A DNA stretch of 63,978 nucleotides, filler included, from Octopus bimaculoides (taxonomy: Eukaryota): assembly GCF_001194135.2 (NCBI RefSeq). It is 5 parts of 4 records of this genome, joined end to end, with 100 filler letters (N's around TTAATTAATTAA, not from the genome) between each part and the next. Parts side by side here need not be neighbours in the genome. Positions count along the whole stretch, not along the records: positions 30,313 to 50,247 come from NC_068990.1; 4 more parts are not named here. One strand, given 5' to 3'. A model generated the notes under the pieces. That model was not told where the DNA came from, did no database searches, and saw only the letters and a list, made by a program, of their open reading frames with translations. Positions 30,313-50,247 of this stretch are shown one piece after another. The position numbers were made by a program, and so were the translations under genes. Within the stretch, counting starts at the first letter, position 1; the number at the start of each line of letters is the position of its first letter.

Positions 30313-30425
30313 TATATATATATATATATATATGCACTCACACACAACTAACCAGCTTTACATACTTAACTACCTACTTACCTACCTACCTATCTACCTA
30401 CCTATCTACCTACTTAAATACATAC

Positions 30426-30456
<31 letters not shown>

Positions 30457-31946
30457 CACACATACATACATACATAACAGCATAATATTTGCACGAGACA
30501 ACGGCAGGAGCAGCGTTTGTTATTCTCGTGAGATTGGAATGCCGTCTAAATATCCGTTGTCCACGATCTTTGCTCGCCGAAGAGATTTCCCTCCGAATGT
30601 ACCCATTTAGCATCTGACTCCTTATTAAGGAGAAACGCTTCCGGATAATTATTACGGGTGCATAAACATGTGTATAAACACATTAATAAAGACTATCACC
30701 TATTTTCATTGGAATATATCCTCCATGTTTCCACTCTCTATTTCCGTTCATTATGTTTTCTCACTGCATATATTTTTTAATATATATTTATTTATTATTA
30801 TGTATTAAAGGAGTTTGGTAGTTTGTGTTTGTGGTTTTGTCTTATTACTTCGTGTTTTCAGAATTTTTATTTTATTTATATTGTAAGAGCTGCTTTCTTT
30901 TATATTTAAGTATACTGCTGTTGTACGTTCGTGTACAATCATGCACAAACAGGGAATAATACACATATACGCTCAGGCACAATGAAATAGAGCCCAAATA
31001 TGCACAATCGCACTGCTGTACACACAACACAAACACATATACATACATGTATATATATATATATATATNNNNNNNNNNNNNNNNNNNNNNNNNNNNNNNN
31101 NNNNNNNNNNNNNNNNNNNNNNNNNNNNNNNNNNNNNNNNNNNNNNNNNNNNNNNNNNNNNNNNNNNNNNNNNNNNNNNNNNNNNNNNNNNNNNNNNNNN
31201 NNNNNNNNNNNNNNNNNNNNNNNNNNNNNNNNNNNNNNNNNNNNNNNNNNNNNNNNNNNNNNNNNNNNNNNNNNNNNNNNNNNNNNNNNNNNNNNNNNNN
31301 NNNNNNNNNNNNNNNNNNNNNNNNNNNNNNNNNNNNNNNNNNNNNNNNNNNNNNNNNNNNNNNNNNNNNNNNNNNNNNNNNNNNNNNNNNNNNNNNNNNN
31401 NNNNNNNNNNNNNNNNNNNNNNNNNNNNNNNNNNNNNNNNNNNNNNNNNNNNNNNNNNNNNNNNNNNNNNNNNNNNNNNNNNNNNNNNNNNNNNNNNNNN
31501 NNNNNNNNNNNNNNNNNNNNNNNNNNNNNNNNNNNNNNNNNNNNNNNNNNNNNNNNNNNNNNNNNNNNNNNNNNNNNNNNNNNNNNNNNNNNNNNNNNNN
31601 NNNNNNNNNNNNNNNNNNNNNNNNNNNNNNNNNNNNNNNNNNNNNNNNNNNNNNNNNNNNNNNNNNNNNNNNNNNNNNNNNNNNNNNNNNNNNNNNNNNN
31701 NNNNNNNNNNNNNNNNNNNNNNNNNNNNNNNNNNNNNNNNNNNNNNNNNNNNNNNNNNNNNNNNNNNNNNNNNNNNNNNNNNNNNNNNNNNNNNNNNNNN
31801 NNNNNNNNNNNNNNNNNNNNNNNNNNNNNNNNNNNNNNNNNNNNNNNNNNNNNNNNNNNNNNNNNNNNNNNNNNNNNNNNNNNNNNNNNNNNNNNNNNNN
31901 NNNNNNNNNNNNNNNNNNNNNNNNNNNNNNNNNNNNNNNNNNNNNN

Positions 31947-32003
<57 letters not shown>

Positions 32004-32749
32004 CCTCTCTCTCTCACACACACACAAATGCACAAACGCAACTCATACACTGTCACATACACACTCTCACGCACCCATCTTGTGTTTCGGCCGTCTTCTT
32101 TAGCAATAAAAGGAAAGGAAAGACAAATAATTGTACTTCCTGAATCATAACAACATCCAATCGAATGACTTTTACTCACGACGAAATAATTGCCATACTA
32201 TACTTAGGTCATCAGGTTTGTATTTTATTTCTGTATATTTGCTAATTCTATTTCGACACATTTTTCATAATTCTGTGTGGGTTTGGCCGTTTATATTCCC
32301 TCTGTTTCGACTAAGACCTCGACAAATATATCGTTTGCTCTTTCCTTCCCATCAACTTGATATGCTTTATCCAACGTATTGAGCAATAAAAATAACCATA
32401 AGAAAACCACTAAAACATTAATAACATATCGGTGGTTATAGTTTCGCAATTCAGTTTCATCATATCTTACTGTTTTCTAAGACGTATCACACATATTATT
32501 CATTCTAGAATGTTGCTAATATTTTTTCATTTTTTCTTCTGATTTTTGGTTTGCTTTTTTTTTTATTCTCTCGCTGTTTCACCTTCATATTTACCCTACA
32601 ACATTTGATCTTTTTTTCACAACCTGTGTATTGCTTAGCTTCGAACACTTACCAATCAATTTTTACAAGTGGTTTTACAAATTTCTTACCACGATAAGTA
32701 TGTAATCGTGTTCGTTCAGGACACTGTGCAAACGTTAATATATAATATA

Positions 32750-33015
<266 letters not shown>

Positions 33016-33149
33016 ATATATATGTATACGCATGTGTGTACGTGTTTAAATATGTCTGTGATTATGTGTGTGTTTATGTGGGTGTCACTAGATAGATAGA
33101 CAGACAGATATGTACGTATGTATTATATGTATGTATGTATGCATGCATG

Positions 33150-33194
<45 letters not shown>

Positions 33195-33399
33195 GCACAT
33201 GCTTACGAAAACAGAATCATTAGCATACACAGATACACAAGCGCGCGTGCACACTCGCACACAAGTTTGTCTGCAGCTAAAGAGCTCGTTTCCAGGCATT
33301 GTAGTAGTTGTGATGTCCATCTAACTGCTTAGCGTACGAATAAGCATGCTCTTCAATATTTTCAGATTGGTCTTTGTCTTGAGGGTGGACATCAGTCAA

Positions 33400-34000
33400 C
33401 AGAGATCATATGAAATTTCGTCGCCACAGGTATTAGGACCCAAAACTACTAGATTCCTAAGGGATGGTATGAAGACATCTAAGAAAACAGCAGCTCTGAA
33501 GAGGGCCCTTTTTCTATTATGTTTTGAGCCCTTGACTTGAGGATACAAATAGACTTGAAAAATAGAGTTATTTTTCCGGACGATATGACATTGTCATTGC
33601 CACACCCAGTTCTGTTATAATCTAACCAGGAATAGAAAAATATTTGAGTTAGTTGTACTCAAAGTGCTCTTCAAAGCAGTTTGAGTACAACTGGCATATC
33701 TCACAGATTGTAGAAAAAAAATAGGATATACTCAAAGATGGCATGCAGTCTGGCTTGATGTTCAATGAAAAGGCAAGGTTTTTCAACCAGTTTAGTCTGT
33801 TATTTCCTGCAGAGAAATAGCAACTAAAGGAAGCTACCAGGATATAACCACGACAAGCAAAACCAGTTCAATGTGGATGTGATTAACAGGAAATCGCAGA
33901 TGGAACAATGATTTTCAACAAAGGAGAATTCGCCCCCGCCCTCGTCCATCCTGACGAAGAGTACAGACTGAAGGAGTCGAGGCTTGGCACTTTGATATAC
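33400..34000 (+). mobile_element. Highly decayed non-LTR retrotransposon RT remnant (R2/NeSL-like?)
   Basis: Ordered motif ghosts LFLLCFEPL (RT4-like), VIFPDDMTL (RT5-like), GLMFNEK (RT6-like), PALVHPDEEYR (RT7-like), in different frames. Confidence 0.35.
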
Positions 34001-34221
34001 ACGTTGAAGATTGAGAAGGGTCTCCAACACTACGAGAACTTTAGGCACCAACACGAGAAAAGCTTCAAAGTACTTGAGATCTATGTTCCGGCATACAGAC
34101 ACACACACACACGCACGCACACACGCACGCACACATATTGCTAAGAGTAACAACAGACGTGTAACCACTAGTAATTTTGTGATCGCCATAACCAACGCCT
34201 ATATCAAATACATACATATAC

Positions 34222-34560
<339 letters not shown>

Positions 34561-34609
34561 GTATATATATACACACATACAACATGACACCTCCATTTGC
34601 ATATATATT

Positions 34610-35045
34610 CTTTTATTTTTTTCAATTGTTTCAGTGTTGTTTACTGCGGCCATGCTGGATCACCATTATTCTTTTATTCTTTTATTTGCTTCAGTCTATA
34701 GGCAGCGGTCATGGGGTCGGATAAGCAGAAAGTAGTACTTAAAACTTTTACTAAGCCTGGAACTTATGTTATCGGTTTCTTTTGCCGGAACGGGGACATA
34801 AATACGCCAACGCCGGTTGTCAAACTGTGGTAGTGGACGAACACAGACACAAAGACATACACACACACATACACACACACGCACACACATACACACATAC
34901 TCACACATATACATATATGCGACGGGCTTCTTTCAATTTCTGTCTCACAAATCAACTCACAATGCTTTGGCTTTGCCTAAGATGCCATGCAGTGGGACTG
35001 AATCCGGGAAATTGTGGCTGGGAAGCAACCTTCATGCTACACACC
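34610..35045 (-). mobile_element. SINE-2, older rearranged copy with both halves and internal (CA)n
   Basis: Tail at 34625-34660, middle at 34750-34860, head GACGGGCTTCTTTCAA...TGCCATGCAGTGGGACTGAATCCGGG. Confidence 0.75.
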
Positions 35046-35477
35046 CACACTTACGCACACTTACGCACACGCATAAACACATACATATACCTACTAAATG
35101 TATGCAGACAGTGGGAGAGCGGAAGATAAAACAAGAGGGCTTTATATATAAAACTCCATGTATTAATACATGAATTCATGTTTATATGTAGCTGGGTTTG
35201 ATTGAATAACACAACACATTCTCTTGTTTATACACCGGATTTCCCAAATTTAAGAATAGAATCAAAGATATCACCAAAGCTGTTATAATACGTAGAAAGT
35301 TATGTCTATTGTGACAACTAGACTTAATGTCTGTTCACGTGAGTAACTTAGACTCAGACCAGTGAATACGTAAATGTATATGTGTGTATGTATGTATGTA
35401 TGTATGTATGTATGTATGTATGTTCCTTTTTCTTACTTTATCGGGTTTTCTATGTATACATATATATATATATATAT

Positions 35478-35504
35478 ACTAGCAGAGATACCCGGCGTTG
35501 CCCG

Positions 35505-35505
<1 letters not shown>
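35478..35505 (+). mobile_element. Possible Helitron-type 5' terminal stub within (TA)n
   Basis: ACTAGCAGAGATACCCGGCGTTGCCCGA resembles the ACTAG...CCCGGC...GCCCG starts of non-autonomous Helitron families (recalled, not verified). Confidence 0.35.
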
Positions 35506-35536
<31 letters not shown>

Positions 35537-35549
35537 ATATATATATATA

Positions 35550-35687
35550 CTCTTTTACTCTTTTACTTGTTTCAGTCTTTTGACTGTGGCCATGCTGGAG
35601 CACCGCCTTTAGTCGAGCAAATCGACCCCAAGACTTATTCTTTGGAAGCCTATTACTTATTCTTTCGGTCTCTTTTGCCGAACCGCT
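35550..35687 (-). mobile_element. SINE-2 3' half truncated by a gap
   Basis: Same tail motif; gap 35688-36193 follows. Confidence 0.9.
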
Positions 35688-36193
35688 NNNNNNNNNNNNN
35701 NNNNNNNNNNNNNNNNNNNNNNNNNNNNNNNNNNNNNNNNNNNNNNNNNNNNNNNNNNNNNNNNNNNNNNNNNNNNNNNNNNNNNNNNNNNNNNNNNNNN
35801 NNNNNNNNNNNNNNNNNNNNNNNNNNNNNNNNNNNNNNNNNNNNNNNNNNNNNNNNNNNNNNNNNNNNNNNNNNNNNNNNNNNNNNNNNNNNNNNNNNNN
35901 NNNNNNNNNNNNNNNNNNNNNNNNNNNNNNNNNNNNNNNNNNNNNNNNNNNNNNNNNNNNNNNNNNNNNNNNNNNNNNNNNNNNNNNNNNNNNNNNNNNN
36001 NNNNNNNNNNNNNNNNNNNNNNNNNNNNNNNNNNNNNNNNNNNNNNNNNNNNNNNNNNNNNNNNNNNNNNNNNNNNNNNNNNNNNNNNNNNNNNNNNNNN
36101 NNNNNNNNNNNNNNNNNNNNNNNNNNNNNNNNNNNNNNNNNNNNNNNNNNNNNNNNNNNNNNNNNNNNNNNNNNNNNNNNNNNNNNNNNNNNN

Positions 36194-36238
<45 letters not shown>

Positions 36239-36543
36239 ATACATATATGTAAATGCACACTCATACAAGTGTATACTCATGTATACTGGATTGTAAGTAA
36301 ATATATTTATATGTGTGTGTGTAAATGTATGCTTATATGTATGTATGTATCTATGTATGTGTGTGTGTGTATGTATGTAACACTAACGTCATCACTAATG
36401 CAAGTAATCTAATACTCATCCACGAAGCCACACTTAGAAATTACTACCCGAAAATCATCCAGATACTTGGATATGTGTTTATGATTTTATATGTGACCTT
36501 GTGTACAACCACACACACACACATACACACACACGCACACACA

Positions 36544-36583
<40 letters not shown>

Positions 36584-36718
36584 TACGCACTCACACACAC
36601 ACATATACAGGCATGAAATATATTTATGTGACGTACAGCACTTAACAAGCAGGAAAACCAAGCTGGCAAAATGGCAGGTCAATCGACTTTATCGGCCTCT
36701 TCTGTCTTACTGGCGGCG

Positions 36719-36915
36719 CACATATTTAACCCGTAGCTGCAACGGTTAGCCTCATCAGAATATGATTCCTCTTGTTTCCTGGCATTCAACCTCCAATTTT
36801 ACTTCTAATAATAACAATCACGTTTTCAGTATATGCCATTCTGTTACACCAAAGATGGTTTTAGAATTGCGCATACATCTGATTAATATTATTAATATTG
36901 TGTTGTAGAATATAC
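36719..36915. repeat. ~200-bp dispersed direct repeat, copy 1, with hammerhead-like end on the minus strand
   Basis: Aligns end to end with 38100-38296. Confidence 0.85.
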
Positions 36916-36935
36916 TTATATTCTTGTTGCCGGTT

Positions 36936-36978
<43 letters not shown>

Positions 36979-37086
36979 AACTATAATTATTGATAATTGT
37001 GTAGGTTTATGCGGAAAGGCAATTCAGTTATAAATTTAGTTTTGTTTTCTAGACAATAGTTTACGCGCGCGCGCACACACGCATAC

Positions 37087-37130
<44 letters not shown>

Positions 37131-37169
37131 GCTTACACATAAACACAGCCCACACGTCCCAATGTATAT

Positions 37170-37178
37170 ATATATATG

Positions 37179-37220
<42 letters not shown>

Positions 37221-37227
37221 CACATGG

Positions 37228-37269
<42 letters not shown>

Positions 37270-37370
37270 TGCACACACATATATACATATACACACATGC
37301 AAACACACACAAATATAAATATGTATATTTATATATATATATTTTTGTACATATATCTATATATACGTAC

Positions 37371-37448
<78 letters not shown>

Positions 37449-37477
37449 AGAGAGAGAGAGAGAGAGAGAGAGTTAGG

Positions 37478-37509
<32 letters not shown>

Positions 37510-37510
37510 A
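37170..37510. repeat. Compound (TA)n/(TG)n/(GA)n/(GATA)n microsatellite
   Basis: Direct sequence. Confidence 0.9.
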
Positions 37511-38099
37511 AAATAGGTAGTAGGCATCGAGTATATAAATCCTGGTGTATTTTGAAAGAGTAGCGTGTGTGTGATTCGAGGGAGATTCGACTCCTTTTTA
37601 GCGGGTTCAGTCTGTAATTGCTAAGGTGAATATGATGTACATATTCAGAAAAATTCATAGATATGATGAGTACTAAAACACATAACTCTGCGCTATGTCC
37701 GTATGTTAAAGTCACGTGACATAATTTCACCGAAGGTGAAGGCTTTTTAATGTAGTAACTGTGTCATGGGACACATATGAAAGACAGGTTTTGAAAAAAA
37801 AACTATAAGCAGAGAATTAGCTTAGTAGTATACGTGCATGGTTGTCTATGCGTTTGTGAGAATGTGAACTGCAACTGTGATTTTTCACTTTAAAATATTG
37901 TTATTCCTTATTTAGTCAAGGATTCTTTTGTTTTTAATAAACATATCTGTTTCACTTATTCGTATTTGTTATAGGATTTTTGTCTGGATAAAATTGAACT
38001 GGGGAGACTACGCATTTTGGTTATTTACTTGTTGCAAATGATTGTAAATCTTCGTTTAACGAATCTGTTTGGTATAAATAGCCTGTATTATTAGTGGTT

Positions 38100-38296
38100 C
38101 ACATATTTAACCCGTAGCTACAATAGTTAGCTTCATCAGAATATGATTCCTCTTGTTTCTTGGCATTCAACTTCCAATTTTATTTCCAATAAACACAATC
38201 ACGTTTTCAGTACATGTCATCCTGTTACACCAAAGATGATTGCAGCATTGAGACTACAACTGATTCGTATTATTAATATTGTGTTATAGAATATAC
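38100..38296. repeat. ~200-bp dispersed direct repeat, copy 2
   Basis: Aligns to 36719-36915. Confidence 0.85.
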
Positions 38297-39269
38297 GTAT
38301 AGTCAAAGCTAGAAACAATTCTCTCCCCTTCAGTAGCAGCCAACCACGATGTGTTTTACAAACTACTTCTCAAGCTAAGTTTCGTTTGATCCGTGCAATT
38401 TTCGTAACATACATTACAGTTCATTATACAAATATTTTGACGAACGTGTGACGTATTTTTATTACAGGAAGATATGTGTTTTTTATAAAATAGATGCAGG
38501 TTCAATAGTAATGACAGCCACATTTTCTGGCTATTGCTGCTATGCGCGTAGTGAGTAATTTGCTGCTGGTGAATACTTTTTATGGAATTTGGTCATCCTT
38601 TGCTAATTATTTTGAGTATTTCGAAATTTTGTTTTCATTCTTGTGTCTTCCTTCAATTACAGAATGTATTGATGGATAATTCTGAGTGGTTCTGTATTTC
38701 TTGGGTTCTATATTGTCATCTAATATAAAGTATTTGGAATGTTTGAATTGTTTTCGTAATTCTTGAATGTCTGATACAATGACAGACTTTAATTTGTTAT
38801 TAGTTATTTTATTGGGTACCTTCGTTCAAGTGGAACTTGGTTTAATTCTCTCAGTCTTTTATTTCTAGCTTCAAAATTCAAAACAAATGGACATACCCTT
38901 CGTGACACTCATGTTAATTTTGGTATGATTTCTAAAAACATGATGTGGTTTGCACCAGTGACTTGAAGAACTTAATCACATGGAAATAAAAAACTAAAAC
39001 TAAAATCTAAAAATAAAAGAATTATGTGTACGCTATTCACTGTATAATATAAATTCTTCAACATGCTCAAAGCTGGAAACGATTCTCTCTCCTTCAGAAG
39101 CAGTCAACTACGATGTGCTATTAATTTATTACGAAAAAACAAAACCTGTGCACTGTGCTAGCATACTTATATCGGCTGGCAAAGTCTTCCAAAAACAAAG
39201 AACACCAATAAAAAATAGTAGCTGATGTTGTAGAAGAGAACGACTGTTGGATCATATCTAAGATTATAT

Positions 39270-39588
39270 AACTGTCGCTCCGTCGGTTACGACAATGAGG
39301 GTTGTAGGTTATACGATCAACGAAACAGCCTGCTTGTGAAATTAACGTGTAAGTGGCTGAGCACTTTACAGACACGCGTTCCCTTAACGTAGTTCTCAAG
39401 GAGATTCAGCGTGACAGAATGTAACAAAGCTGGCCATTTGAATTATAGGTAAAACTATTTTTTAACAGCTGAATGGACTGGTGCGACATGAAATAAAGTA
39501 TTTCACTCGTGGACACAACGTGCCGCCGGTGATCAAACTCACCACTTTACGATCGTCAGCCGAATACTCTAACCCCTAATCCACGCTC
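39270..39588 (-). mobile_element. SINE-3 full length with 12-bp TSD
   Basis: CTAAGATTATAT at 39258-39269 and 39589-39600; tRNA-like head on the minus strand; homologous to 19252-19555. Confidence 0.9.
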
Positions 39589-40076
39589 CTAAGATTATAT
39601 TATGTTCAGCTGGTTGTTGGAAATAAATGATATGTTGCTAATAGCCATGTAAAGTATATTGACATTATAAAATCCAATTTACATAATCGAAAGCTATGAA
39701 CGCAGGGTGACGGATGTTGAAAGTAATTACTAAATACATTATAAATACTAATCGTTTATTGCATGAAAGCTTATCGTCGCCCCAGCAGATGATACAAGAG
39801 TTTATTCAGTATTCCCTTTTGTCACTTATCTGTGAGTATTTGTTTTTCTGTTTTGTTTTGTGAATGTTTCCTTTGACAGAGTAGTGTCCTAAAAAGCGGG
39901 AAACATGTCATCCATTTTACGTTGCTAAAAGCAGGATACATAAATGGCCGTTGGATTCGATTTAATTAATAAACATATAGCCAAATGATGATCACGCAGG
40001 AGAGGCTACTATATTAATTAACTATAAACAACATATGTCTATATATGTATACATGCATATAGGCTTACGTGTATAA

Positions 40077-40139
<63 letters not shown>

Positions 40140-41032
40140 CTGATATATTGTATACTAAGGCTTATTCTTCATTCTTAATATTCATCATAATATATCTTGG
40201 ATAAATTCCATATCGATCAATGAAGCCACCAAAAAAATATCACGAGCCGAGGAAAAAGAATCTTTGGAAGTCTTGTAATGCAGTTAGCTTTGACTGAATA
40301 AATTTCTTTAAACCGCTTACTGAAGTCTTTCTTCTTTAAAAGAAAAAGCATTTCTTTCCGTCGCCATTCTCTTTTCTATATCCATTCTCTTTTTTTTCTT
40401 TCTATCTAAGAAATTCTTTTACACTCTGTTCTTTAGCAAAGTATTTTATCTTCCTAACATTGGCCATCTTCCAAACATCATTCAAGAAAAAAAAAAGATG
40501 TCTTTTTAGTCAACGCTTTTTAACTAGTTTCATGGCACTTTCTCTTGCAACATTTTCCACATATCTTCTTTCTTATACACTTCTATAAATGAGAAAAAAA
40601 AAGTGTCCTGTTCTTTGTGGTTCCTTTTTGACAGCAAAGGGACTGTTTTTGAGTCCATTTTAACCTACAGCAAAAGAAGATTTGCATGACATGTGCTTCA
40701 AAAACTTGTGTAAAAGAAACAGAGAAACAGAATGTAAAACTTCTAGCTTTTTTTTTTAAATTCTATCAACTCTGAAGGGTCACCCAAACCACCACCACCA
40801 CCACTACCACCACCACTACCACCACTACCACCACTACGACCACCACCAACACCAATACCCCTTTCAAAAAGGAAGAATCGTGTATTTAGTAAAAAAGAAA
40901 TATGGACAGTAATTCTTTCATATTAGATAGAATTCATGATATTCTGCTTTTGGAAAGCATGGAAGAAAAGAAAAGTATTGAAAATTGAAACTATTAAAAG
41001 TTTGAGTTAATCAAAGCAATGATTGAAGTTCG

Positions 41033-41119
41033 CTAGATATATAGATATCTAAATATATAGATATCTAAATATATATAGATATATAAATATCTAGATATAT
41101 AGATATATAAATAGATATA
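41033..41119. repeat. AT-rich minisatellite of self-complementary AGATATCT/TAGATATATA units
   Basis: Direct sequence. Confidence 0.7.
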
Positions 41120-41292
41120 TGGAACAAACCGATTCTCTCCATGCATACATACATAGATACGTACATACATATAGATATATTTATATACTTATATATATAT
41201 ATGTGTGTGCGTGTGTGTATGTGTGTGTGTGTGTGTGCGTGTGCGTTTACCAATACGTATATGTATGTACATTAATACATATCTATGTAATA

Positions 41293-41407
<115 letters not shown>

Positions 41408-41704
41408 TTTTATATACAACTTTTCATTCCTACATAACTACAATAATCTTAAGATTTATTGATTATTTAAATTCCACTATTATTTCTGTTTTGATAACTT
41501 TCTCCTTCCTCTGTTTATACTTTATCTAATAAGAATAATATAATACACCTAATAATAATAATAATAAATTATTCTTTTGTATGTATATACATATAAATAT
41601 ATATATATGTGTTTATGTATATTTATGTATATGTATGTATATGTAAACTTGTGTATATTTGTATGTACTTATATTTATAACTTAACCTTATGAACTTTCT
41701 AAAC

Positions 41705-41830
41705 TCTCTGACGAAGCCCAGAGACACACCCAAGTTCCTTTATCTTATCTACCATATACCTCAGTTCACTGAAGGGATGGCAGTAGAGTGTGGTACTATG
41801 GCCTCTTCCTAGAAACAGCTGTAAGATACT
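41705..41830 (+). ncRNA. Degenerate hammerhead-like motif(s)
   Basis: TCT-CTGACGA (41705-41714); second core CTGAAGG (41769-41775); GAAAC-AGCT-GTA-AGA (41812-41826) with palindromic stem III; TCT/AGA could form stem I. Confidence 0.4.
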
Positions 41831-42204
41831 ATACGACTTTCTATGCTCTACGTTACATATTTTAATAATTACTGGTATTTCTATATATTATATATGTAAA
41901 CCATAATATGTTATACATGTATGTATATTATAATTGTTTGTGTAAAAAATAAATAAATAGACAAAATACAATGTCTAAAAGTTGATTAATACCACCTCTT
42001 GATCCCCTCCGTTTTATTATCGTTCTGTCGCTGTTGAGTGGAAAATCCTATGGATAGTGACATTTTCCCTTCAAGGACTGTCTCAGGATGATGTTCATAC
42101 CAGTAAGCATGAGTGTTGATTGTGTAGTGTTTACATATTTTCTAATGTAAATAGTGTCCTGTGACGATTTTAAATTCGTTTGGGGTCAGCACAGGACATC
42201 CCGG

Positions 42205-42400
42205 GATGAGATGGTCAATTGTTTCATTCCGTCCGTCTTTATGTTCTGAATTCAAATTCCGCCGAGGTCGACTTTGAATTTCATCCTTTCGGGGTCGATT
42301 AATTAAGTATAATTGAAACATTGAAGCCGTTGTAGTTGGCTAAAACTCTCCACCACCAGCACCAGACATATTTTAGGCCTTTTGCCTTTATTTATTTAAA
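42205..42400 (+). mobile_element. SINE-1, 5'-degenerate copy
   Basis: GAATTCAAATTCCGCCGAGGTCGACTTTG...TCATCCTTTCGGGGTCGATTAATTAAGTA. Confidence 0.8.
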
Positions 42401-42479
42401 GTATAATAATTCAGTTCCTGGGAATGTTTTTACTTAGCGGAGCCAATCATCTCCTATGTTTAATAAGTGAATAAGTATA

Positions 42480-42870
42480 GACGCAGGAGTGGCTGTGTGG
42501 TAAGTTGCTTGCTTACCAACCACATGGTTCTGGGTTCAGTTCCACTGCATGGCACCTTGGGCAAGTATCTTCTACTATAGCCTCGGGCCGACCAAAGCCT
42601 TGTGGGTGGATTTGGTAGACGGAAACTGAAAGAAGTCCATCGTATATATATGTGTGTGATTGTGTCTTTGTTTGTCCCCACACCTACTATCGCTTGACAA
42701 ACGATGTTGGTGTGTTTCTGTCCATGTAACTTAGCGGTTCGGCAAAAAGACAACCGATAGAATACGCACTAGGCTTACAAAGAATAAGTCCTGGGGTCGA
42801 TTTGCTCGGCTAAAAGGCGGTTCTCCAGCATCACCGCAGTCAAATGACTGAAACAAGTAAAAGAAGAAAA
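42480..42870 (+). mobile_element. SINE-2 full-length, gap-free reference copy (~390 bp)
   Basis: tRNA-like head GGAGTGGCTGTGTGGTAAG...GGGTTCAGTTCC, CACCTTGGGCAAGTATCTTC, short (TA)(TG) core, middle, tail GGCGGTTCTCCAGCATCACCGCAGTCAAATGACTGAAACAAGTAAAAGA. Confidence 0.9.
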
Positions 42871-43769
42871 GAACAAGTACAAAATTATATGTATTTATTT
42901 GTCGCATGTACACGATGCGTAAACAAAACAATGAAAGAAAGAAAGAAAGAAAAAAGAAAGAAAGAAAGAAAGGAAAAAGAAAGAAAGAAAGAAAGAACGA
43001 AAGAAAGAAAGAAAGGAGTGAAAGGGTAATTGTAGCAGCTGCAAATTGCTACAACACTTCGAAAATACTTAGCATTGTATAAGAAACATATAAAGTAAGT
43101 TTACGACAATGGGTTTACAAAAGTGAAACATATGTATTACATGATAAGTTTAAAACAGCTAGAACAATGCCATTTGTATACAAACAAAACGTGCTACACA
43201 TTTCACGGGAATTCAACGTGGAACAGATTTCAGTACTATATTAAAAATAAAAAAAAATTCACAGACACGCAGAGATATATAAGTATACTGGCACATACAC
43301 ATACAAAAAAAAAAAAAAGAAAGGGAAAAGAGAAAAAGGAGAAATAATATGATTTGTGAAATGACCACCCACTAGCCAAGACAAAAAGAATTACGAATCA
43401 CCAACATATCAGAAAGAATGGTGCATTATAAGTTACACCCTGAGAGCGAGAGGAGACGTAAAGAGAATATAATGCAGGAGCGATGTGACAAACGTTACTC
43501 TATTATGCTTTGTATTATGTTAGTAAAATGGGGTGAAAAGGTATGTATACCACTCATAGTTGCGCTCGTATTGATGTAGAGAAACATGTATTATACACGT
43601 ATTTATGAACGTGTGTATGTATGTATGCATGTATGTATGTATGTGTGTATGTATGTATGTATGTGTGTATATAGAAGCACACACGTATTAATTTATATAT
43701 GTTTTTATTGTTATATATTTATTGTTATAAATGTGTATGTATATCGACATCTATCTATCTATCTATTTA

Positions 43770-43859
<90 letters not shown>

Positions 43860-43923
43860 AGATAGATAGATAGATAGATAGATAGAAAGATATGTATACG
43901 TGAATTTGTATATATAATCGTAA

Positions 43924-43959
<36 letters not shown>

Positions 43960-44142
43960 TCATTTATATATCTATACATAGGATTGTGTTTATTTACGAG
44001 TAGATACATGTTTTTAAGTATAGTTTACTGTCACTAATATATACAGAGATAGCAAGAGAGAAGATACATACATACATACAGACAGACATGCATAAATGTA
44101 TATATATATATCGATATATATGTGCGTGTGTGTGAGTGTGTG

Positions 44143-44198
<56 letters not shown>

Positions 44199-44199
44199 T

Positions 44200-44350
44200 G
44201 TGTCTGTCACACCACCGCTTGACAAAAGGGACCTATAAAATAGGTACCACTTGATAGAAAATATGTTTGTTCATTCAACTAAAAATTCTTCAATGCGGTG
44301 CCCCAGCATGGCAGCAGTCAAATAACTGAAACAACCAAAAGATAAAAGAT
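44200..44350 (+). mobile_element. SINE-2 3' portion, internally deleted
   Basis: GCGGTGCCCCAGCATGGCAGCAGTCAAATAACTGAAAC after (TG)n. Confidence 0.8.
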
Positions 44351-44366
44351 AACATATTATTTGTGT

Positions 44367-44525
44367 TAAGGCGGCGAGCTGGCAGAGACGTCAGCACGCC
44401 GATTAAGATACGTAGCAGTATTTTCGCCAGTTTTTACGTTCCGAGTTCAAATTCCGCCACAGTCAACTTTGCCTTTCATCCATTCGTGGTCAATAAAACA
44501 AGCGCCAATTGAAAATTGGAGTCGA
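44367..44525 (+). mobile_element. SINE-1 copy
   Basis: AAGGCGGCGAGCTGGCAGAGACG...CCGAGTTCAAATTCCGCC...TTTGCCTTTCATCC. Confidence 0.85.
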
Positions 44526-44577
44526 CGTATTCTACCGACACCACTTCCCTCTTGTGGCAAAATATTAAACCGAAATA

Positions 44578-44670
44578 TTATTCTTTTACTTGTTTCAGTC
44601 ATTTGACTGCAACCATGCTGGAGCACCGCCTGGTAATTATTCTATCGGTTACTTTTGCCGAACCGCATGG
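44578..44670 (-). mobile_element. SINE-2 tail fragment with internal deletion
   Basis: TTTCAGTCATTTGACTGCAACCATGCTGGAGCACCGCC joined to TTATTCTATCGGTTACTTTTGCCGAACCGC. Confidence 0.85.
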
Positions 44671-44689
44671 TTACTCTGAAACCTTGTTG

Positions 44690-44979
44690 CTATCTTCTTC
44701 TTCTTCTTCACTTCGTCGTCGTCCTCGTCCACCTCCTCCTCCTCCTCCTCCTTCTTCTTTCCCTTCTTCTTCGTCTCTTCGTCGTCGTCGTCCTCCCCCT
44801 TCTTCTTCTACTTCTTCTTCTTCGTCGACATAGTCGCCGTTCTGTTCCTCCTCCTTCTTCCCCTTTTTCTTCCTCTTCGTCGTCGTCCTCCTCCACTTCC
44901 CCTTCCCCTCCTACTCCCTCTTCTTCTTCTTCTTCTTCTTCTTCTTCTTCTTCTTCTTCTTCTTCTTCTTCTTTTTCTT

Positions 44980-45010
<31 letters not shown>

Positions 45011-45060
45011 TTATTATTATTATTATTATTATTGTTTCTATCATTATTATTGTTATTATA
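44690..45060. repeat. Compound trinucleotide array (CTT/CGT/CCT/ATT)
   Basis: Direct sequence. Confidence 0.9.
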
Positions 45061-45378
45061 AACACTATTCACCACTTCTTCCTTTATAACAATGTTCGTT
45101 CTTGAAATTCTTGTAATATGACAATAAAAGGAAATAAAAACATATTGAATTGAATTCAAAATATCAGTCATACAACACATTTCACATGCATTCTTATAAA
45201 GAAATAATCCCTTGTTATCAATACAATCGATATGAGAAAGTTTTATACACTATAAGAATGATTCGTCTCCATACAGGCGTCTCCGTGCATGTCTGCGCGT
45301 ACACTGAACCGGTGACAGGTGTATATAACGTTTGTTCCTGCCTTTATATGGAGGTGTACATATATACATGTATGTATG

Positions 45379-45419
<41 letters not shown>

Positions 45420-45701
45420 NNNNNNNNNNNNNNNNNNNNNNNNNNNNNNNNNNNNNNNNNNNNNNNNNNNNNNNNNNNNNNNNNNNNNNNNNNNNNNNNN
45501 NNNNNNNNNNNNNNNNNNNNNNNNNNNNNNNNNNNNNNNNNNNNNNNNNNNNNNNNNNNNNNNNNNNNNNNNNNNNNNNNNNNNNNNNNNNNNNNNNNNN
45601 NNNNNTTAATTAATATCGATTTATTACCAGGAAGCTAGCACATTTAAAGAATTAGAGAGATTCAGAAAAATATCTGAGATCTTAGGGGATTAAAGTATAT
45701 T

Positions 45702-45799
45702 TTTATATATAACGTTGACTACTAAAGTGGACAATTTAGGTCTTAGTAGACACGTGGTCTATTACTAGCACATTAAATGTCCACTTTAGTGGTCAACGG

Positions 45800-45809
<10 letters not shown>
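45702..45809. mobile_element. ~108-bp TA-flanked foldback (MITE-like)
   Basis: 32-bp arms 45702-45733 / 45778-45809 with 1 mismatch and 1 G-T pair, plus an inner stem TAGTA-GAC...GTC-TAT-TACTA. Confidence 0.7.
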
Positions 45810-45848
<39 letters not shown>

Positions 45849-45889
45849 TATATATATATATATTCCTTTTTATGTATACATATGTTATT

Positions 45890-46146
45890 ATTTTAGTTTC
45901 AGCTCAGAGCTGTGGCCATGCTGGGGCACCGCCCTTTTGCTACACTGTTATTAGTTAGAGCCTCCTCTAAAAGGTGGCATTTGGTGAATCAGGGACTTTG
46001 ATTTTGCTACCCTCATTTGCATCTCTTGCCGCGAGGTAGGTTCATTTTGGACTATCGACACGAGGAGTTCCAGTTTTCATTTGAAAACATTTACATCCAC
46101 TTTGTGTTGGTCTCTCAGGCTCTTTGGGAGAATATTAAAAAGCCGG
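45890..46146 (-). mobile_element. CR1-like LINE 3' terminus (ORF end plus short 3' UTR)
   Basis: RLFNILPKSLRDQHKVDVNVFK*KLELLVSIVQNEPTSRQEMQMRVAKSKSLIHQMPPFRGGSN*, then GGCGGTGCCCCAGCATGGCCACAGCTCTGAGCTGAAACTAAAA. Starts at the motif where the 22735-23345 fragment ends. Confidence 0.85.
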
Positions 46147-46170
46147 AATCGGCCGAGGGAACGGTCCTCA

Positions 46171-46208
46171 TTGAAGAGGCGACCGAAATAGCCGAAACTG
46201 AACGTTCA
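46171..46208 (+). ncRNA. Degenerate hammerhead-like motif
   Basis: TTGAAGA-GGC-GACCGAAATA-GCC-GAAAC-TGAACGTTCA (perfect 10-nt palindrome). Confidence 0.35.
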
Positions 46209-46521
46209 AGATAATGAATTTTTGATCGGTGGTATTAGCCAATTACAGTCCCTGTTCGCATATATATATATATATACAATTATAAGCGTCTCCTACAGCA
46301 TTAAAGCATTTTCGCTCTTATTTCTAGCAATGTAGGTTCTCTGACACCCTTCGTCGTATTTAGTCCTATATGTATGTATATATACATGTGTGTGTGTGTG
46401 TGTATACATACATATACATGTACATACACATACATATATATATACATTTCTATATGTGGATGCTTGTACGAATACACGTAAGTATATATATGTGTATGTA
46501 TGTAGGTTTGAGTATGTGTGG

Positions 46522-46566
<45 letters not shown>

Positions 46567-47877
46567 TGTAATATATCAATAGAAGCATATATAATTTGGC
46601 GGGGGAGCAAGAAATCTCGAAGCAGATAAACTTATTAATAACGACGTATAAATGTATAAAAGACGCCGTATGCTATCTGTGGAATGGAAGCCCACGTGCC
46701 CTGTGAACGTGGCAAGCCTTCTCCCATGGACGAAAGCAATCTTTCAAATTCACCTATATTGTTATGGCGTCTACATCATATACTTATATCGAAAGTCAAC
46801 AATTATATTCTACTAAATTTAGATGTATTGTTAGAGCCGAATACTGCAGTATTAGACTTGAGCGGTCCTTTTATTGAAAAATAAATATTAGCAACGGAAG
46901 TAGTATTATTACTGAGAGACAATCTTTATATGCTAATAAACATGGGTGCATATTATTAGAGCTTCGAATTCTGTTGTATTCGACTTGAGAGGTCCTTTCA
47001 TATAGACGTGCAGCTATTTCCAACATCAGTTTAGAAATAGGAATCGTTTTAATCCCTTTGATTTCTTTACTGACATTTATATACTATGATAGTAACCTTG
47101 CTGTATGTATGGTATACTTGTTAGTCCATAATATTTAAAGTGCTTTTATTTGCTAGTTCTGGAAGTTGTATTCTTCGTACATAATCTTTATGTTGAATAC
47201 AGAATTTCACATGTCAACGTCTTTCGTTGCTTGATGTTTCAACTTGCTTTCCGATAAAACAGGAAAGCTGTAAGCATATTTCGATAGGTAAAAAAGGAAC
47301 TAAGATAAACATGGAGTGGCTTACGTAGATAGATACATAAGTGTCACGTTGTTGTGTGTTTATCAGAAGCTTATGTCAGAAACCTGAGTGAGTAAATCTG
47401 TGTGAAATTACATTTAAGTATAGCGAAAAATGAGAAAGAATGAGATAGAAAATGTATGAGCAATCATTCATAACAAAGGATGGATCAAACCAGATCCTTT
47501 CCCTGTCTTCGTAGATGTCATTTACTACGAATTAAATGGGCTTTCTCAAAGTAAACGAGCCCCTCATTGAAACTTATACTACGTAATACGTAGTTATATT
47601 CAATGGCCTTACAAAAGAATTTCCGACCCAAGATAAATGGGATTTTCACCACTGAATCACATGAAACATTCGATTCGTGAAATTTAAGCCATACGAGTTA
47701 TGAGGAGTAATCATTCTCGTTATTGACACCATGGCCTAGAACTGCGTTGCACTGAGAGAATCGTTACTTCGCCGGACAAAATACTTATTCATAGTCAAGT
47801 GCTAGTTATTGCATGGCAATCTCGCAATTGAGCATTATATATGGGCAGGGGTTAAAGAATGATTTATCCATGGTTTG

Positions 47878-47944
47878 TACGGCAGATAAGAAAACAGAGA
47901 GGATCTGTCGATTCTGTATCCTCTCCGTTTTCTTATCTGCCGTA
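47878..47944. other. 67-nt near-perfect hairpin (27-bp stem, 13-nt loop), TA at both ends
   Basis: 47878-47904 pairs with 47918-47944; only mismatch is A47896:C47926. Confidence 0.9.
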
Positions 47945-48469
47945 TATACTATATATATATATATAATGTGCGAGTGTGAGTGCGTGCGTGTGTGTGTGTG
48001 CGTGTGTGCATGCGTGTCTGAGTCTGCATGGCTTTGTACGTGTATGCGTAAATGATGAATGCACACGTTACAACAAATATATCATGATGAATACTTTATC
48101 AGAAAGCCAAATGAAAACAGAAAAGAAGGCCAAATAATAAAAATGGAATTAATTTGAAATAAAAGTAAAAGAACGAACTGCTTGCAGCAGTTATGGTATT
48201 GTATTGTATTTTATTGTGTTCAAATAAAATTCTTCTTCGTCACGAAATAATAGAATACAAGTGTTAATGGTGAGTGTGAAAGGCAAAAAGGCCTACGTTC
48301 GGTCCTATAGAAAATAGAAATGCAACACACTTTATTTAGAAAGAATTTACACAATACCAATAAAAGACGCCGCTTGCCTTGTTGAAGATTAGAAGTGTAT
48401 TATATTTCTGCAAACGTTGTTTCTTAGCACACACACACACATATCTCTGCCACTCTGTCTCCCTCCGTA

Positions 48470-48512
<43 letters not shown>

Positions 48513-49392
48513 NNNNNNNNNNNNNNNNNNNNNNNNNNNNNNNNNNNNNNNNNNNNNNNNNNNNNNNNNNNNNNNNNNNNNNNNNNNNNNNNNNNNNNNN
48601 NNNNNNNNNNNNNNNNNNNNNNNNNNNNNNNNNNNNNNNNNNNNNNNNNNNNNNNNNNNNNNNNNNNNTATATGTATGTATGTATGTCCATCTCTTTCTC
48701 ACTCTCTCTCGCTTTCTCACTCTCACACAGCATATATATATATATATATATATATATCGAAACGCCGGTGTTTTAATGGTGGCAGCTGATGAAGGATATG
48801 TTCTCTATGTGGCCTGCTTGTTTGTTGTACCTTGTTTATCATTTTGTCCATATTCTTTTGCAACGTCATGTACCCAGATATGTAACAATATGTACATGTA
48901 TAGTTACCGCAGGTCAGCTCTTGCAATCGTCTATTGCAGACCTGTAAATCGGATTATATGCAATGTTGCCGGGAAACATCGAGTTCAATATGTAAGTGCG
49001 CCGTGCTGGTATTATATATAATATATAGTCCTTTATTTCAACTGTTTTGAGGTCAACTTCTTTCGGTGTTACAGACGTGGTTTCAATTCTGTGATCGGAA
49101 ATGGGGTCATTCGCTCGTGTTGGCTTTTGCACACGTAAAACTCCTATCTCATTCACGATGTTATTGTTAAAATCAATTTTTGACAGTTCTCCGATAAATA
49201 AGTTGTATTTTAAGGTATCTACCAACCAGAATCACTCGACAGGTTTCCAGCCATAACTCTGTGATGCCCTCTCCACTATTCACCCTTGCACAGACTAACC
49301 ATAAAGGAGATAATGTCAGAGAGTAAAAAGGAGAAATAGAATAAATGTTAAAAACAGCTTTATTTAAGGCTTCCTCACTCTTAGAGATGTTT

Positions 49393-49669
49393 GTCTAGGG
49401 CATTGGGACTCAACTGAGGTCCATAAGCTTTTGCGGTCCATACGGCCCCGGGAGTCCTTATAAACTTTTGTTAAAATTTATATGCAATATACTAGTTATG
49501 CATTTACAATACACAACGTTATTTAATATTTATATAATTCCTAATAATATTTCCTTATAAAAATATAATATGATTTTGAAAATATCGAGTGACTGGATGG
49601 GTCCCTTTGAGCAAAAACGGAATGAAAGTGGTCCATACGTAAAAACGATTGAGAAACACTAGTCTAGAG
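49393..49669. mobile_element. hAT-type MITE (49401-49661) with 8-bp TSD
   Basis: Degenerate TIRs CATTGGGACTCAAC / GATTGAGAAACACTA (cf. CAGTGGTTCTCAAC); TSD GTCTAGGG / GTCTAGAG (7/8). Confidence 0.7.
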
Positions 49670-50247
49670 AGACTGAAAAAGATACCTCTACACCAGCCTA
49701 GTATATTGGGGGAAACAGGAACATGATTCCCTGTAAAATTTACACATATTTATTCATCGCTATTTTTTTTTATTACTACTATTTTTACGGTTGAATGATA
49801 ATTCCGCAACTTTCCCTTATTTAACTGTCTCATTTCACAATTTTTCTCAACACGTCTCCACAACACACGAACACAAACACCGACACAAAAACACACAAAC
49901 ATACGCATACACGCTCATAAACCTATATGTATTCACATGTATGTACAAGTGTACACATATATGCACACATAACTGCATGCGCACGTATATATTGTTTATT
50001 TAAATAACGTTTTTTCTTTTAAATTATCAGATTTTAGCAATTCTTTTCCTCCGAAAATGTAAAATTTTTTATTACATGCAATTGTACATTTTATAACTAT
50101 TATTATTTTTGTTTTCATTTAAATAATTATTACATGAAAATTAAGTGTCAAAAATTCCATGCAATACAGCTTCCTAAAAAATGTTAAAGTACCACATAAC
50201 TATACACCCACACACACAGAGGTGTATATATATATATATATATATAT

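What the first reader, a model, noticed from the sequence alone, without database searches (positions are those of the whole stretch)
45890..46146. CR1-like LINE and SINE-2 share a 3' end with a compensatorily mutated stem-loop
Seen: just after the LINE stop codon comes GGCGGTGCCCCAGCATGGCCA-CAGCT-CTG-AGCTG-AAAC. SINE-2 ends GGCGGTGCTCCAGCATGGCCG-CAGTC-AAAT-GACTG-AAAC. Stem positions 4 and 5 switch from C-G/T-A to T-A/C-G, so pairing is kept while sequence changes. Across SINE-2 copies (15216, 34241, 35570, 42838, 44595, 50781, 57640) the stem is constant and the loop varies. Established: stringent CR1/L2-type LINEs recognise a 3' stem-loop that partner SINEs borrow. Inference: this identifies the mobilising LINE of an abundant SINE and its recognition structure. 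Whether this pair is already described is unknown to me.
Basis: partly seen in the sequence, partly recalled or inferred. Interest (0 to 1): 0.72.

Follow-up and report, generated by a model that had tools for sequence, protein, structure and literature searches.

The report
Octopus SINE shares CR1-like LINE tail
A broken copy of a long jumping gene (a CR1-like LINE) and an abundant short one (a tRNA-type SINE) in this octopus-type genome end in the same ~40-base, two-hairpin RNA tail, the classic sign that the short element borrows the long one's copying enzyme; it is real, but it is an ordinary example of a well-known relationship.

Summary
On the minus strand at 45896-45933, 14 nt after the double stop of a decayed, 5'-truncated LINE ORF2 remnant (about 45948-46260), lies GGCGGTGCCCCAGCATGGCCA-CAGCT-CTG-AGCTG-AAAC. 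Six SINE tails in the piece carry the same motif with CAGTC...GACTG.

Eight other independent LINE copies, fetched through the LINE's C-terminal peptide, carry the same tail within about 60 nt of the ORF2 stop, followed by a short microsatellite. They include an intact 984-aa endonuclease plus reverse-transcriptase ORF and a copy on an Octopus vulgaris chromosome.

Both show compensatory changes. Stem-2 pair 4 is C-G in all 9 LINE tails and U-A in all 9 SINE tails, never unpaired. These changes amount to only a few evolutionary events.

The window's LINE copy is not the best-matching lineage. Another lineage (L045) matches the SINE's first hairpin and microsatellite better, and no sampled LINE has the SINE's exact second stem.

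This is a new member of a well-known kind: stringent SINE/LINE pairs with a shared 3' tail, already shown with compensatory stems for bivalve CR1. I found no open paper describing the octopus pair. Repbase and Dfam could not be checked.

The parts
45948..46260 (-). Decayed, 5'-truncated remnant of LINE ORF2 C-terminus (about 103 codons, one frame, two internal stops, ends in TAA TAA at 45953-45948)
   Evidence: Translation. BLASTP to the intact 984-aa ORF2 P0004: 56% identity over 57 aa, E 1e-17. HMMER hits to cephalopod LINE C-termini. DNA alignment to other copies.
45914..45933 (-). LINE tail hairpin 1: GGC-G-GUGC(CCCA)GCAU-G-GCC
   Evidence: Predicted in single-sequence folds and independently by RNAalifold. 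About 92% of cells are paired across 18 tails, with C-G to U-G to U-A changes at one pair.
45900..45912 (-).
   Evidence: Sequence read directly. Covariation with the SINE and with other LINE lineages.
45884..45899 (-). Conserved GAAAC followed by a short A/T-rich terminal repeat (UAAAAUAAUAAC), the 3' end of the LINE copy
   Evidence: GAAAC is nearly invariant in 18 tails. Other LINE copies continue with lineage-specific 5-9 nt microsatellites.
42480..42875 (+). Full-length SINE-2 copy (396 nt): tRNA-like head with A/B boxes, CORE-like middle, internal TG/TA run, LINE-type tail at 42816-42854, (AAGWAAAAG)n end, no TTTT inside
   Evidence: Sequence. BLAST to other copies. Covariance-model hit of 60.6 bits. 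No internal T4 run.
34222..34439 (-). SINE-2 copy (3' 220 nt) with the reference tail GGCGGUGCUCCAGCAUGGCCG-CAGUC-AAAU-GACUG-AAAC at 34240-34278
   Evidence: (71.4 bits).
35551..35687 (-). SINE-2 copy cut by an assembly gap; tail at 35569-35607, loop AAAA
   Evidence: (70.2 bits).
44578..44680 (-). 5'-truncated SINE-2 copy; tail at 44592-44630 (first hairpin GGUU for GGCC)
   Evidence: (61.5 bits).
44220..44355 (+). Older SINE-2 subfamily copy; tail at 44295-44332 with the LINE-like CCCA loop in hairpin 1, stem 2 CAGUC/AACUG, (AAAAGAUA)n end
   Evidence: 57.7 bits. Resembles three O. vulgaris copies.
34623..35010 (-). Old SINE-2-like copy with two tails in tandem (decayed tail plus (AATAAAAG)n at 34674-34727, then a second tail at 34623-34673 with stem CAGU/ACUG)
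   Evidence: 50.9 bits; family D14.

Best explanation
The window holds a dead, 5'-truncated copy of a CR1-like LINE (apurinic-type endonuclease plus reverse transcriptase) and several copies of a tRNA-headed SINE. The SINE's last ~45-60 nt were taken from the 3' untranslated end of that LINE family.

The shared module has four parts: hairpin 1, whose sequence is almost invariant (GGYGGUGC-NCCA-GCAUGRCC); hairpin 2, a 5-bp stem whose distal two pairs vary with compensation and whose loop is free; GAAAC; and a short 5-9 nt microsatellite.

By analogy with tested stringent-type LINEs, the likely mechanism is as follows. The LINE's ORF2 protein binds this 3' module on its own RNA. The terminal repeats anneal to the nicked target and prime reverse transcription. 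The Pol III transcript of the SINE, which carries the same module and has no internal T4 terminator, is accepted in trans.

Shown: the anatomy, the homology, that the tail is the genuine LINE end in nine independent copies of several lineages, and base-pair covariation.

Inferred: protein binding, priming by the repeats, trans-mobilisation, and which LINE lineage was the actual partner.
For: The tail is at the LINE end in the window.

The same tail follows the ORF2 stop in independent copies:
- L034: intact 984-aa ORF with Exo_endo_phos and RVT_1 domains
- L035-37 and L039
- L038/L048: O. vulgaris chromosome OX597824.1
- L044 and L045
- L046 and L047

The covariance model finds only these tails and the SINE tails, at 37-71 bits. 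Chance pattern matches in bacteria score at most 24 bits.

Covariation: 92% of cells are paired, against 22-41% when partners are slid. Stem-2 pair 4 is CG:9 / UA:9 with none unpaired. Pair 5 is CG:11 / UA:3. A hairpin-1 pair is CG:9 / UG:5 / UA:2. RNAalifold recovers hairpin 1 exactly and hairpin 2 in the same register (4 of its 5 pairs).

The SINE tail matches L045 over 61 nt, including the microsatellite. The SINE has no internal TTTT.

The tandem tail at 34623-34727 fits re-insertion into a like microsatellite.

Precedent: bivalve SINEs and CR1-14_CGi share 3' stem-loops with compensatory changes (PMC4824008; PMC4758252).
Against: There is no functional test.

None of the 9 LINE tails has the SINE's CAGTC/GACTG stem, so the true partner lineage is unsampled or extinct, or the enzyme tolerates the change.

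The covariation reflects few independent events, and sequences were partly aligned to a model built from them.

Some sister LINE copies have different or strongly diverged 3' ends (L032, L040), so tail identity is not uniform in the family.

ARAGORN and Rfam do not call the SINE head a tRNA.

The host species of the window and of the ENA/Logan contigs is inferred, not given.
Confidence: 0.8

Rival explanations
1. The SINE's different second stem was not produced by compensatory evolution within the pair. It was inherited from a separate LINE lineage (unsampled here or extinct) that already carried CAGTC/GACTG. On this view the LINE in the window is only a cousin of the true mobiliser.
For: LINE lineages already differ among themselves in stem 2: CAGCU/AGCUG in the window and in L035/L039 (the latter two with A at position 3, CAACU), against CAGCC/GGCUG in L044/L045/L046. 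They also differ in microsatellite unit. L045 matches the SINE better than the window copy does. The old SINE-2 subfamily in O. vulgaris already has CAGTC/GACTG, so the difference is ancient.
Against: Nine LINE tails from at least four lineages were sampled and none has U-A at pair 4. The sample is small and was not chosen at random.
Confidence: 0.4
2. The tail next to the LINE remnant is a chance juxtaposition: a short SINE tail fragment inserted beside an unrelated LINE fragment.
For: Very short 5'-truncated tail insertions do occur in this piece (34623-34673). The window has only one LINE copy.
Against: Eight other independent LINE copies carry the tail at the same place, after the stop of a homologous ORF, with LINE-specific stem-2 variants never seen in the SINE.
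Confidence: 0.02
3. The shared tail is a historical relic only. The SINE was founded on this LINE's tail, but its large expansion was driven by another enzyme (for example the RTE or Dong-R4 LINEs that dominate octopus genomes), or recognition depends only on the terminal microsatellite and not on the hairpins.
For: RTE and Dong-R4 cover more of the O. vulgaris genome than CR1, in both the total and the recently active sets (PMC13282606). No functional data were obtained here.
Against: Hairpin 1 and the stem of hairpin 2 are kept in diverged SINE subfamilies, with compensatory changes, while loops and flanks drift. That pattern argues for continued selection on the structure in active master copies. 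CR1 is among the recently active O. vulgaris LINEs (13 families, 787 insertions).
Confidence: 0.1

Closest known systems
Bivalve CR1-14_CGi / CR1-1_CGi with BivaV-SINE2, BivaCORE-SINE1 and Vhc_1 SINEs (Nishihara et al. 2016, PMC4824008; Matetovici et al. 2016, PMC4758252)
   Same: A mollusc CR1-type LINE and tRNA-derived SINEs share the 3' tail. The tails fold into conserved stem-loops. Compensatory mutations between SINE and LINE stems were used as support, and partner assignment was by tail homology only.
   Different: The host class differs (cephalopod, not bivalve). I could not compare the actual tail sequences, because the figures and supplements are not held. Homology of the tail itself to CR1-14_CGi is therefore untested.
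Eel UnaL2 / UnaSINE1 and zebrafish ZfL2, the stringent-type L2-clade LINEs (Kajikawa and Okada 2002; cited from my own knowledge and via PMC4824008)
   Same: The LINE enzyme recognises a 3' stem-loop, terminal short repeats are needed for priming, and the SINE with the same tail is mobilised in trans. This is the tested model that the mechanism here is borrowed from.
   Different: Those are vertebrate L2-clade elements with one conserved stem-loop and (TGTAA)n-type repeats. Here there are two adjacent hairpins, GAAAC, and lineage-specific 5-9 nt repeats. Nothing here is experimentally tested.
Amniote CR1 3' end (hairpin plus 8-nt microsatellite) and CR1-mobilised SINEs such as tortoise Pol III/SINE (Ohshima et al. 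1996; from my own knowledge)
   Same: The architecture is an ORF2 stop, a short UTR with hairpin(s), then an octamer-like microsatellite. 5'-truncated copies are typical.
   Different: There is no sequence similarity that I could test. Clade membership of the octopus LINE is not established by phylogeny.
Octopus SINEs OR1, OR2 and OK (Ohshima and Okada 1994), one of which is a CORE-SINE
   Same: These are tRNA-derived octopus SINEs. SINE-2 has a tRNA-like head followed by a segment that looks like the CORE domain (CTTGGGCAAGT...GCCTCGGG), so it may be the same as, or a descendant of, one of these families.
   Different: Identity is untested. The latest O. vulgaris annotation still lists most SINEs as unclassified.

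Membership tests
Non-LTR retrotransposon (LINE) with APE-type endonuclease and reverse transcriptase | ORF2 with an Exo_endo_phos endonuclease domain followed by an RVT_1 reverse transcriptase domain | tested here: met
   The intact relative P0004 (984 aa) matches PF03372, PF14529 and PF00078 above their cut-offs. The window remnant aligns to its C-terminus at 56% identity, E 1e-17. The window copy itself retains only the last ~103 codons.
CR1 clade (in the strict sense) of LINEs | Placement of the reverse transcriptase domain within the CR1 clade in a phylogeny with reference elements (as opposed to L2, Rex1, Daphne and others) | not tested
   No reference LINE library (Repbase/Dfam) is available. 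The C-terminal 'LFNxLPxxxR...FKxxLDxxL' motif resembles CR1 from memory only. Sources give the relatives no clade names.
CR1/L2-type 'stringent' LINE 3' end | Short 3' UTR with conserved stem-loop(s), followed by a short tandem repeat instead of poly(A) | tested here: met
   Nine LINE copies have two hairpins, GAAAC, then (AATTA)5, (ATTTAAAG)3, (AATAAAAG)2, (AATTAAAG)2 and similar.
SINE/LINE pair with a common tail | The SINE 3' end is homologous to the 3' end of the LINE | tested here: met
   29/39 identity to the window copy, and 61 nt at 79% to L045 including the microsatellite. One covariance model captures both.
SINE/LINE pair with a common tail | The LINE protein mobilises the SINE RNA in trans, dependent on the tail | not testable with these tools
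   Needs a retrotransposition assay.
Conserved RNA structure | Base pairs maintained through compensatory (two-sided) changes | tested here: met
   6 of 12 pairs have two-sided changes and 92.5% of cells are paired. No shuffle in 500 reaches the observed covariation score, and slid controls give 22-41% paired. Caveat: few independent events, and the alignment was fitted to the model.
tRNA-derived SINE | 5' head derived from a tRNA, with internal Pol III A and B boxes | tested here: inconclusive
   A-box-like TGGCTGTGTGG and B-box-like GGTTCAGTTCC are seen by eye at 42490-42545. ARAGORN finds no tRNA and Rfam gives no tRNA hit at E<=1.
CORE-SINE superfamily / octopus OR1-OR2 | Central ~60-nt CORE domain homologous to that of MIR and other CORE-SINEs | not tested
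   The resemblance of 42555-42600 to the CORE motif is recalled from memory. No reference sequence was available.

The most novel reading that the evidence does not exclude
The two-hairpin tail may be the previously unassigned recognition module that links the very large, still 'unclassified' octopus SINE expansion to one CR1-like LINE family. Hairpin 1 is nearly invariant in sequence across LINE lineages whose proteins are only 45-66% identical. Hairpin 2 is kept only as structure. On this reading hairpin 1 would be read by sequence and hairpin 2 by shape. That would give an invertebrate model for how a stringent LINE enzyme recognises its template, and a handle to date and explain the octopus-specific SINE burst.
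Probability: 0.35. Interest if true: 0.45.

Novelty: new member of a known kind. Interest (0 to 1): 0.33.

Why it matters
Octopus genomes are unusual among cephalopods for a huge SINE load, about 12% of O. vulgaris, and most of it is still listed as unclassified in a 2026 annotation. Assigning an abundant SINE family to a CR1-like partner through a defined two-hairpin tail would improve repeat annotation. It would also allow SINE and LINE activity to be dated together, and it would give a concrete RNA element to test. It does not change the understanding of how SINEs are mobilised, because the same logic is established in eel and zebrafish and has been described for bivalve CR1 elements.

Tried and rejected
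- **Word-indexed protein search** with the decayed window peptide found nothing. The HMMER library search rescued it.
- **Collection scans with GGCGGTGCYCCAGCATGGCC** found nothing in viral contigs and 31 hits in metagenome contigs. All 31 are GC-rich bacterial chance matches.
- **Collection scans with the gapped tail pattern** gave 34 hits in genome contigs and 4 in viral contigs. All score at most 24 bits with the covariance model, against at least 37 bits for real tails. These DNA collections therefore do not hold the host genome, and a genome-wide census was not possible.
- **Rfam at E<=1** gave only sub-threshold microRNA hits on microsatellites and nothing for the tail or the SINE head. 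ARAGORN found no tRNA.
- **Full-text search for the tail sequences** gave 0 papers. Searches for an octopus SINE/LINE partner description found none. Supplements of the two mollusc SINE papers are not held. Albertin et al. 2015 is not held.
- **Target-site duplications** around the LINE remnant and the full-length SINE are not assessable, because the flanks are (TA)n or A-rich low-complexity sequence.
- **L032/33 and L040/41** are LINE relatives whose 3' ends are strongly diverged or different. They were left out of the structural alignment. L042/43 is too decayed to be detected.
- **'Chance SINE tail insertion'** was considered and rejected (see rival explanations).

Full report
**What is there.** The piece (30313-50247) is AT-rich, microsatellite-rich animal DNA with four assembly gaps.

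Upstream of it on that strand, one reading frame with two internal stops runs from about 46260 to a double stop TAA TAA at 45953-45948. Its translation carries a CR1/L2-type ORF2 C-terminus (...RLFNILPKSLRDQHKVDVNVFKxKLELLVSIVQNEPTSRQEMQMRVAKSKSLIHQMP...). There is no longer ORF further upstream.

The SINE tail GGCGGTGCTCCAGCATGGCCG-CAGTC-AAAT-GACTG-AAAC is exact at 34240-34278 (-). Close copies are at 35569 (-), 42816-42854 (+) and 44592 (-). A degenerate core motif occurs 7 times, against 0.03 expected from shuffles.

The DNA collections on offer do not contain the host genome. Scans returned only GC-rich bacterial chance matches. I therefore went through the protein. The word-indexed search failed, but the HMMER search of representatives found cephalopod-type LINE C-termini. 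Among them is P0004, an intact 984-aa ORF2 with Exo_endo_phos and RVT_1 domains, 56% identical to the window remnant.

Looking up the contigs that encode these and related proteins gave independent LINE 3' ends:

| Locus | Note | Tail | Terminal repeat |
|---|---|---|---|
| L034 | Intact ORF; tail starts 7 nt after the stop | GGTGGTGCCCCAGCATGGCCG-CAGCC-CTA-G(C)GCTG-AAAC | (AATTA)5 |
| L035-37 | | GTTGATGCTCCAGCATGGCAG-CAACT-ATGA-AGCTG-AAGC | (ATTTAAAG)3 |
| L039 | | GGCGGTGCC-CAGCATGGCTA-CAACT-CGTG-AGCTG-AAAC | |
| L038/L048 | Octopus vulgaris chromosome OX597824.1 | GGCAGTGCTCTAGTATG-CCA-CAGCC-TTTG-GGGTG-AAAT | |
| L044 | | GGTGGTGCACCAGCATGGCCA-CAGCC-AACTC-GGCTG-AAAC | |
| L045 | Tail directly after the stop | GGGCGGTGCTCCAGCATGGCCT-CAGCC-ACT-GGCTG-AAAC | GGTTAAAAGAATAAAAGAAT |
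| L046 | | GGTGGTGCTCCAGCATGACCA-CAGCC-ATAT-GGCTG-AAAC | CAATTAAAGAATTAAA... |
| L047 | | GGTAGGGCTCAAGCATGACCG-CAGCG-GCAT-GGCTG-AAAC | |

Other copies of this LINE family therefore end the same way, and the 'chance SINE tail insertion' reading is rejected. Two relatives have strongly diverged or different 3' ends (L032, L040), so tails are not uniform across the whole family.

**Structure.** Single-sequence folds show two adjacent hairpins, not one:
- Hairpin 1 is GGC-G-GUGC(NCCA)GCAU-G-GCC.

RNAalifold on a MAFFT alignment of 9 LINE and 6 SINE tails recovers hairpin 1 exactly and hairpin 2 in the same register.

Counting pairs on that alignment gives 91.6% of cells paired. On an 18-tail alignment that adds three O. 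vulgaris SINE copies, 92.5% are paired. When the partners are slid, only 22-41% are paired, and no shuffle in 500 reaches the observed covariation score.

| Pair | Counts across 18 tails |
|---|---|
| Stem-2 pair 4 | C-G in all 9 LINE tails, U-A in all 9 SINE tails, never unpaired |
| Stem-2 pair 5 | C-G 11, U-A 3 (window, L035, L039), unpaired 4 |
| One hairpin-1 pair | C-G 9, U-G 5, U-A 2 (the stepwise compensatory path) |

Three caveats apply. These counts trace back to perhaps three to five evolutionary events. The sequences are related. The 18-tail alignment was fitted to a model built from 15 of them.

Hairpin 1 is strikingly conserved in sequence across lineages whose C-terminal proteins are only 45-66% identical. 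Hairpin 2 keeps only its shape, and its loop is free: CUG, ACU, AUAU, AACUC, AAAU, UAAU, UGAU.

**The SINE.** The full-length copy at 42480-42875 (396 nt) has these features:
- a head with A- and B-box-like motifs;
- a middle segment that resembles the CORE domain (from memory);
- an internal TG/TA run;
- the LINE-type tail, ending in (AAGWAAAAG)n;
- no internal TTTT, so a Pol III transcript could run through the tail.

ARAGORN and Rfam do not recognise the head as a tRNA.

An older subfamily is represented by 44220-44355 in the window and by three copies in the O. vulgaris locus that are 67-70% identical to the window's full-length copy. It has the LINE-like CCCA loop in hairpin 1 but already carries CAGTC/GACTG. 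The difference from the LINE stems is therefore ancient.

Inside the piece, 'stem constant, loop varies' is only weakly true: AAAT in four copies and AAAA in one. The O. vulgaris copies, with loops TAAT or TGAT and the same stem, support it better.

**Which LINE is the partner?** The window copy is dead. Its lineage (CAGCU/AGCUG, end UAAAAUAAUAAC) is not the closest to the SINE.

L045 shares the SINE's hairpin-1 loop (UCCA). Its (AATAAAAG)n-type microsatellite is also seen on SINE copies at 34623-34727. BLAST aligns 61 nt of the L045 tail to the SINE end.

No sampled LINE has the SINE's exact stem 2. Two readings remain open:
- The enzyme reads stem 2 as shape and tolerates the change.
- The true partner lineage is unsampled or extinct.

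**Host.** P0007 lies on O. vulgaris chromosome OX597824.1, and that locus carries SINE-2-like copies. A second SINE family in the window (about 42190-42335 and 44370-44530) also flanks the LINE copies in L034 and L046. The window is therefore octopod DNA. The species is not determined.

**Mechanism (inferred).** As in the tested stringent-type LINEs (UnaL2/ZfL2; my own knowledge, cited in PMC4824008), the proposed steps are:
1. ORF2 protein binds the 3' module of its own RNA.
2. The terminal repeats pair with the nicked target and prime reverse transcription.
3. SINE RNA with the same module is used in trans.

The tandem tail at 34623-34727 looks like a ~50-nt 5'-truncated insertion into the microsatellite of an older copy, which fits repeat-guided priming.

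**Comparison with what is known.** The kind is well established. In molluscs, bivalve SINEs share 3' stem-loops with CR1-14_CGi and CR1-1_CGi, and compensatory mutations were noted there (PMC4824008; PMC4758252).

For octopus I found no open paper that assigns a LINE partner to a SINE. The RTE-2_OV paper does not address it. The 2026 O. vulgaris annotation lists CR1 among recently active LINEs and leaves most SINEs unclassified. Repbase, Dfam and SINEBase could not be consulted, so prior description there cannot be excluded. Strict CR1-clade membership was not tested.

**Verdict.** The finding is a new member of a known kind, of moderate to low interest. It is useful for octopus repeat annotation and as a defined RNA element for testing.

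Noticed in passing
window 34623-34727 (minus strand): Two LINE-type tails lie in tandem. A decayed tail followed by (AATAAAAG)n is at 34674-34727, and a second, better-preserved tail is at 34623-34673. It looks like a ~50-nt 5'-truncated retro-insertion into the terminal microsatellite of an older SINE copy.
   Followed up: partly
window 45708-45806: A ~95-nt near-perfect palindrome flanked by TATATA lies directly 3' of the LINE tail. As DNA it folds at -31.6 kcal/mol, z-score -11.4. It resembles a MITE. Rfam gives only sub-threshold plant microRNA hits.
   Followed up: partly
window about 42190-42335 and 44370-44530 (minus strand); also L034 3240-3291 and L046 about 680-707: A second, unrelated SINE family is present (the two window copies are 72% identical). 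Its 5' end (TTTCTTTACTACCCACAAGGGGCT...) abuts the LINE copies in two metagenome contigs, which ties those contigs to the same host group as the window.
   Followed up: partly
L040/L041 864-1000; L032 1050-1140: Sister LINE copies have a different 3' UTR. L040/L041 carries a perfect 10-bp hairpin (GATTACAATG...CATTGTAATC). L032 carries a strongly diverged version of the tail. 3' modules therefore differ between lineages of one LINE family.
   Followed up: no
L048 2951-3377, 15348-15699, 15987-16349 (O. vulgaris OX597824.1): Three old SINE-2-like copies are 67-70% identical to the window's full-length copy. They have stem 2 CAGTC/GACTG and loops TGAT or TAAT. One has compensatory changes in hairpin 1 (GUGU...ACAU).
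   Followed up: partly
window 36702-36923 and 38083-38304: A 222-nt direct repeat, 86% identical and 1.4 kb apart (family D13). It is probably another interspersed repeat.
   Followed up: no
window 44640-45090: A long purine-rich (GAA/GAG/GAC)n tract lies immediately 5' of the truncated SINE-2 copy at 44578-44680 (minus-strand sense).
   Followed up: no
window 30313-50247: All 137 Rfam matches at E<=1 are microRNA or snoRNA models hitting TA/TG/CA microsatellites, far below their gathering scores. They are artefacts of low-complexity sequence.
   Followed up: yes
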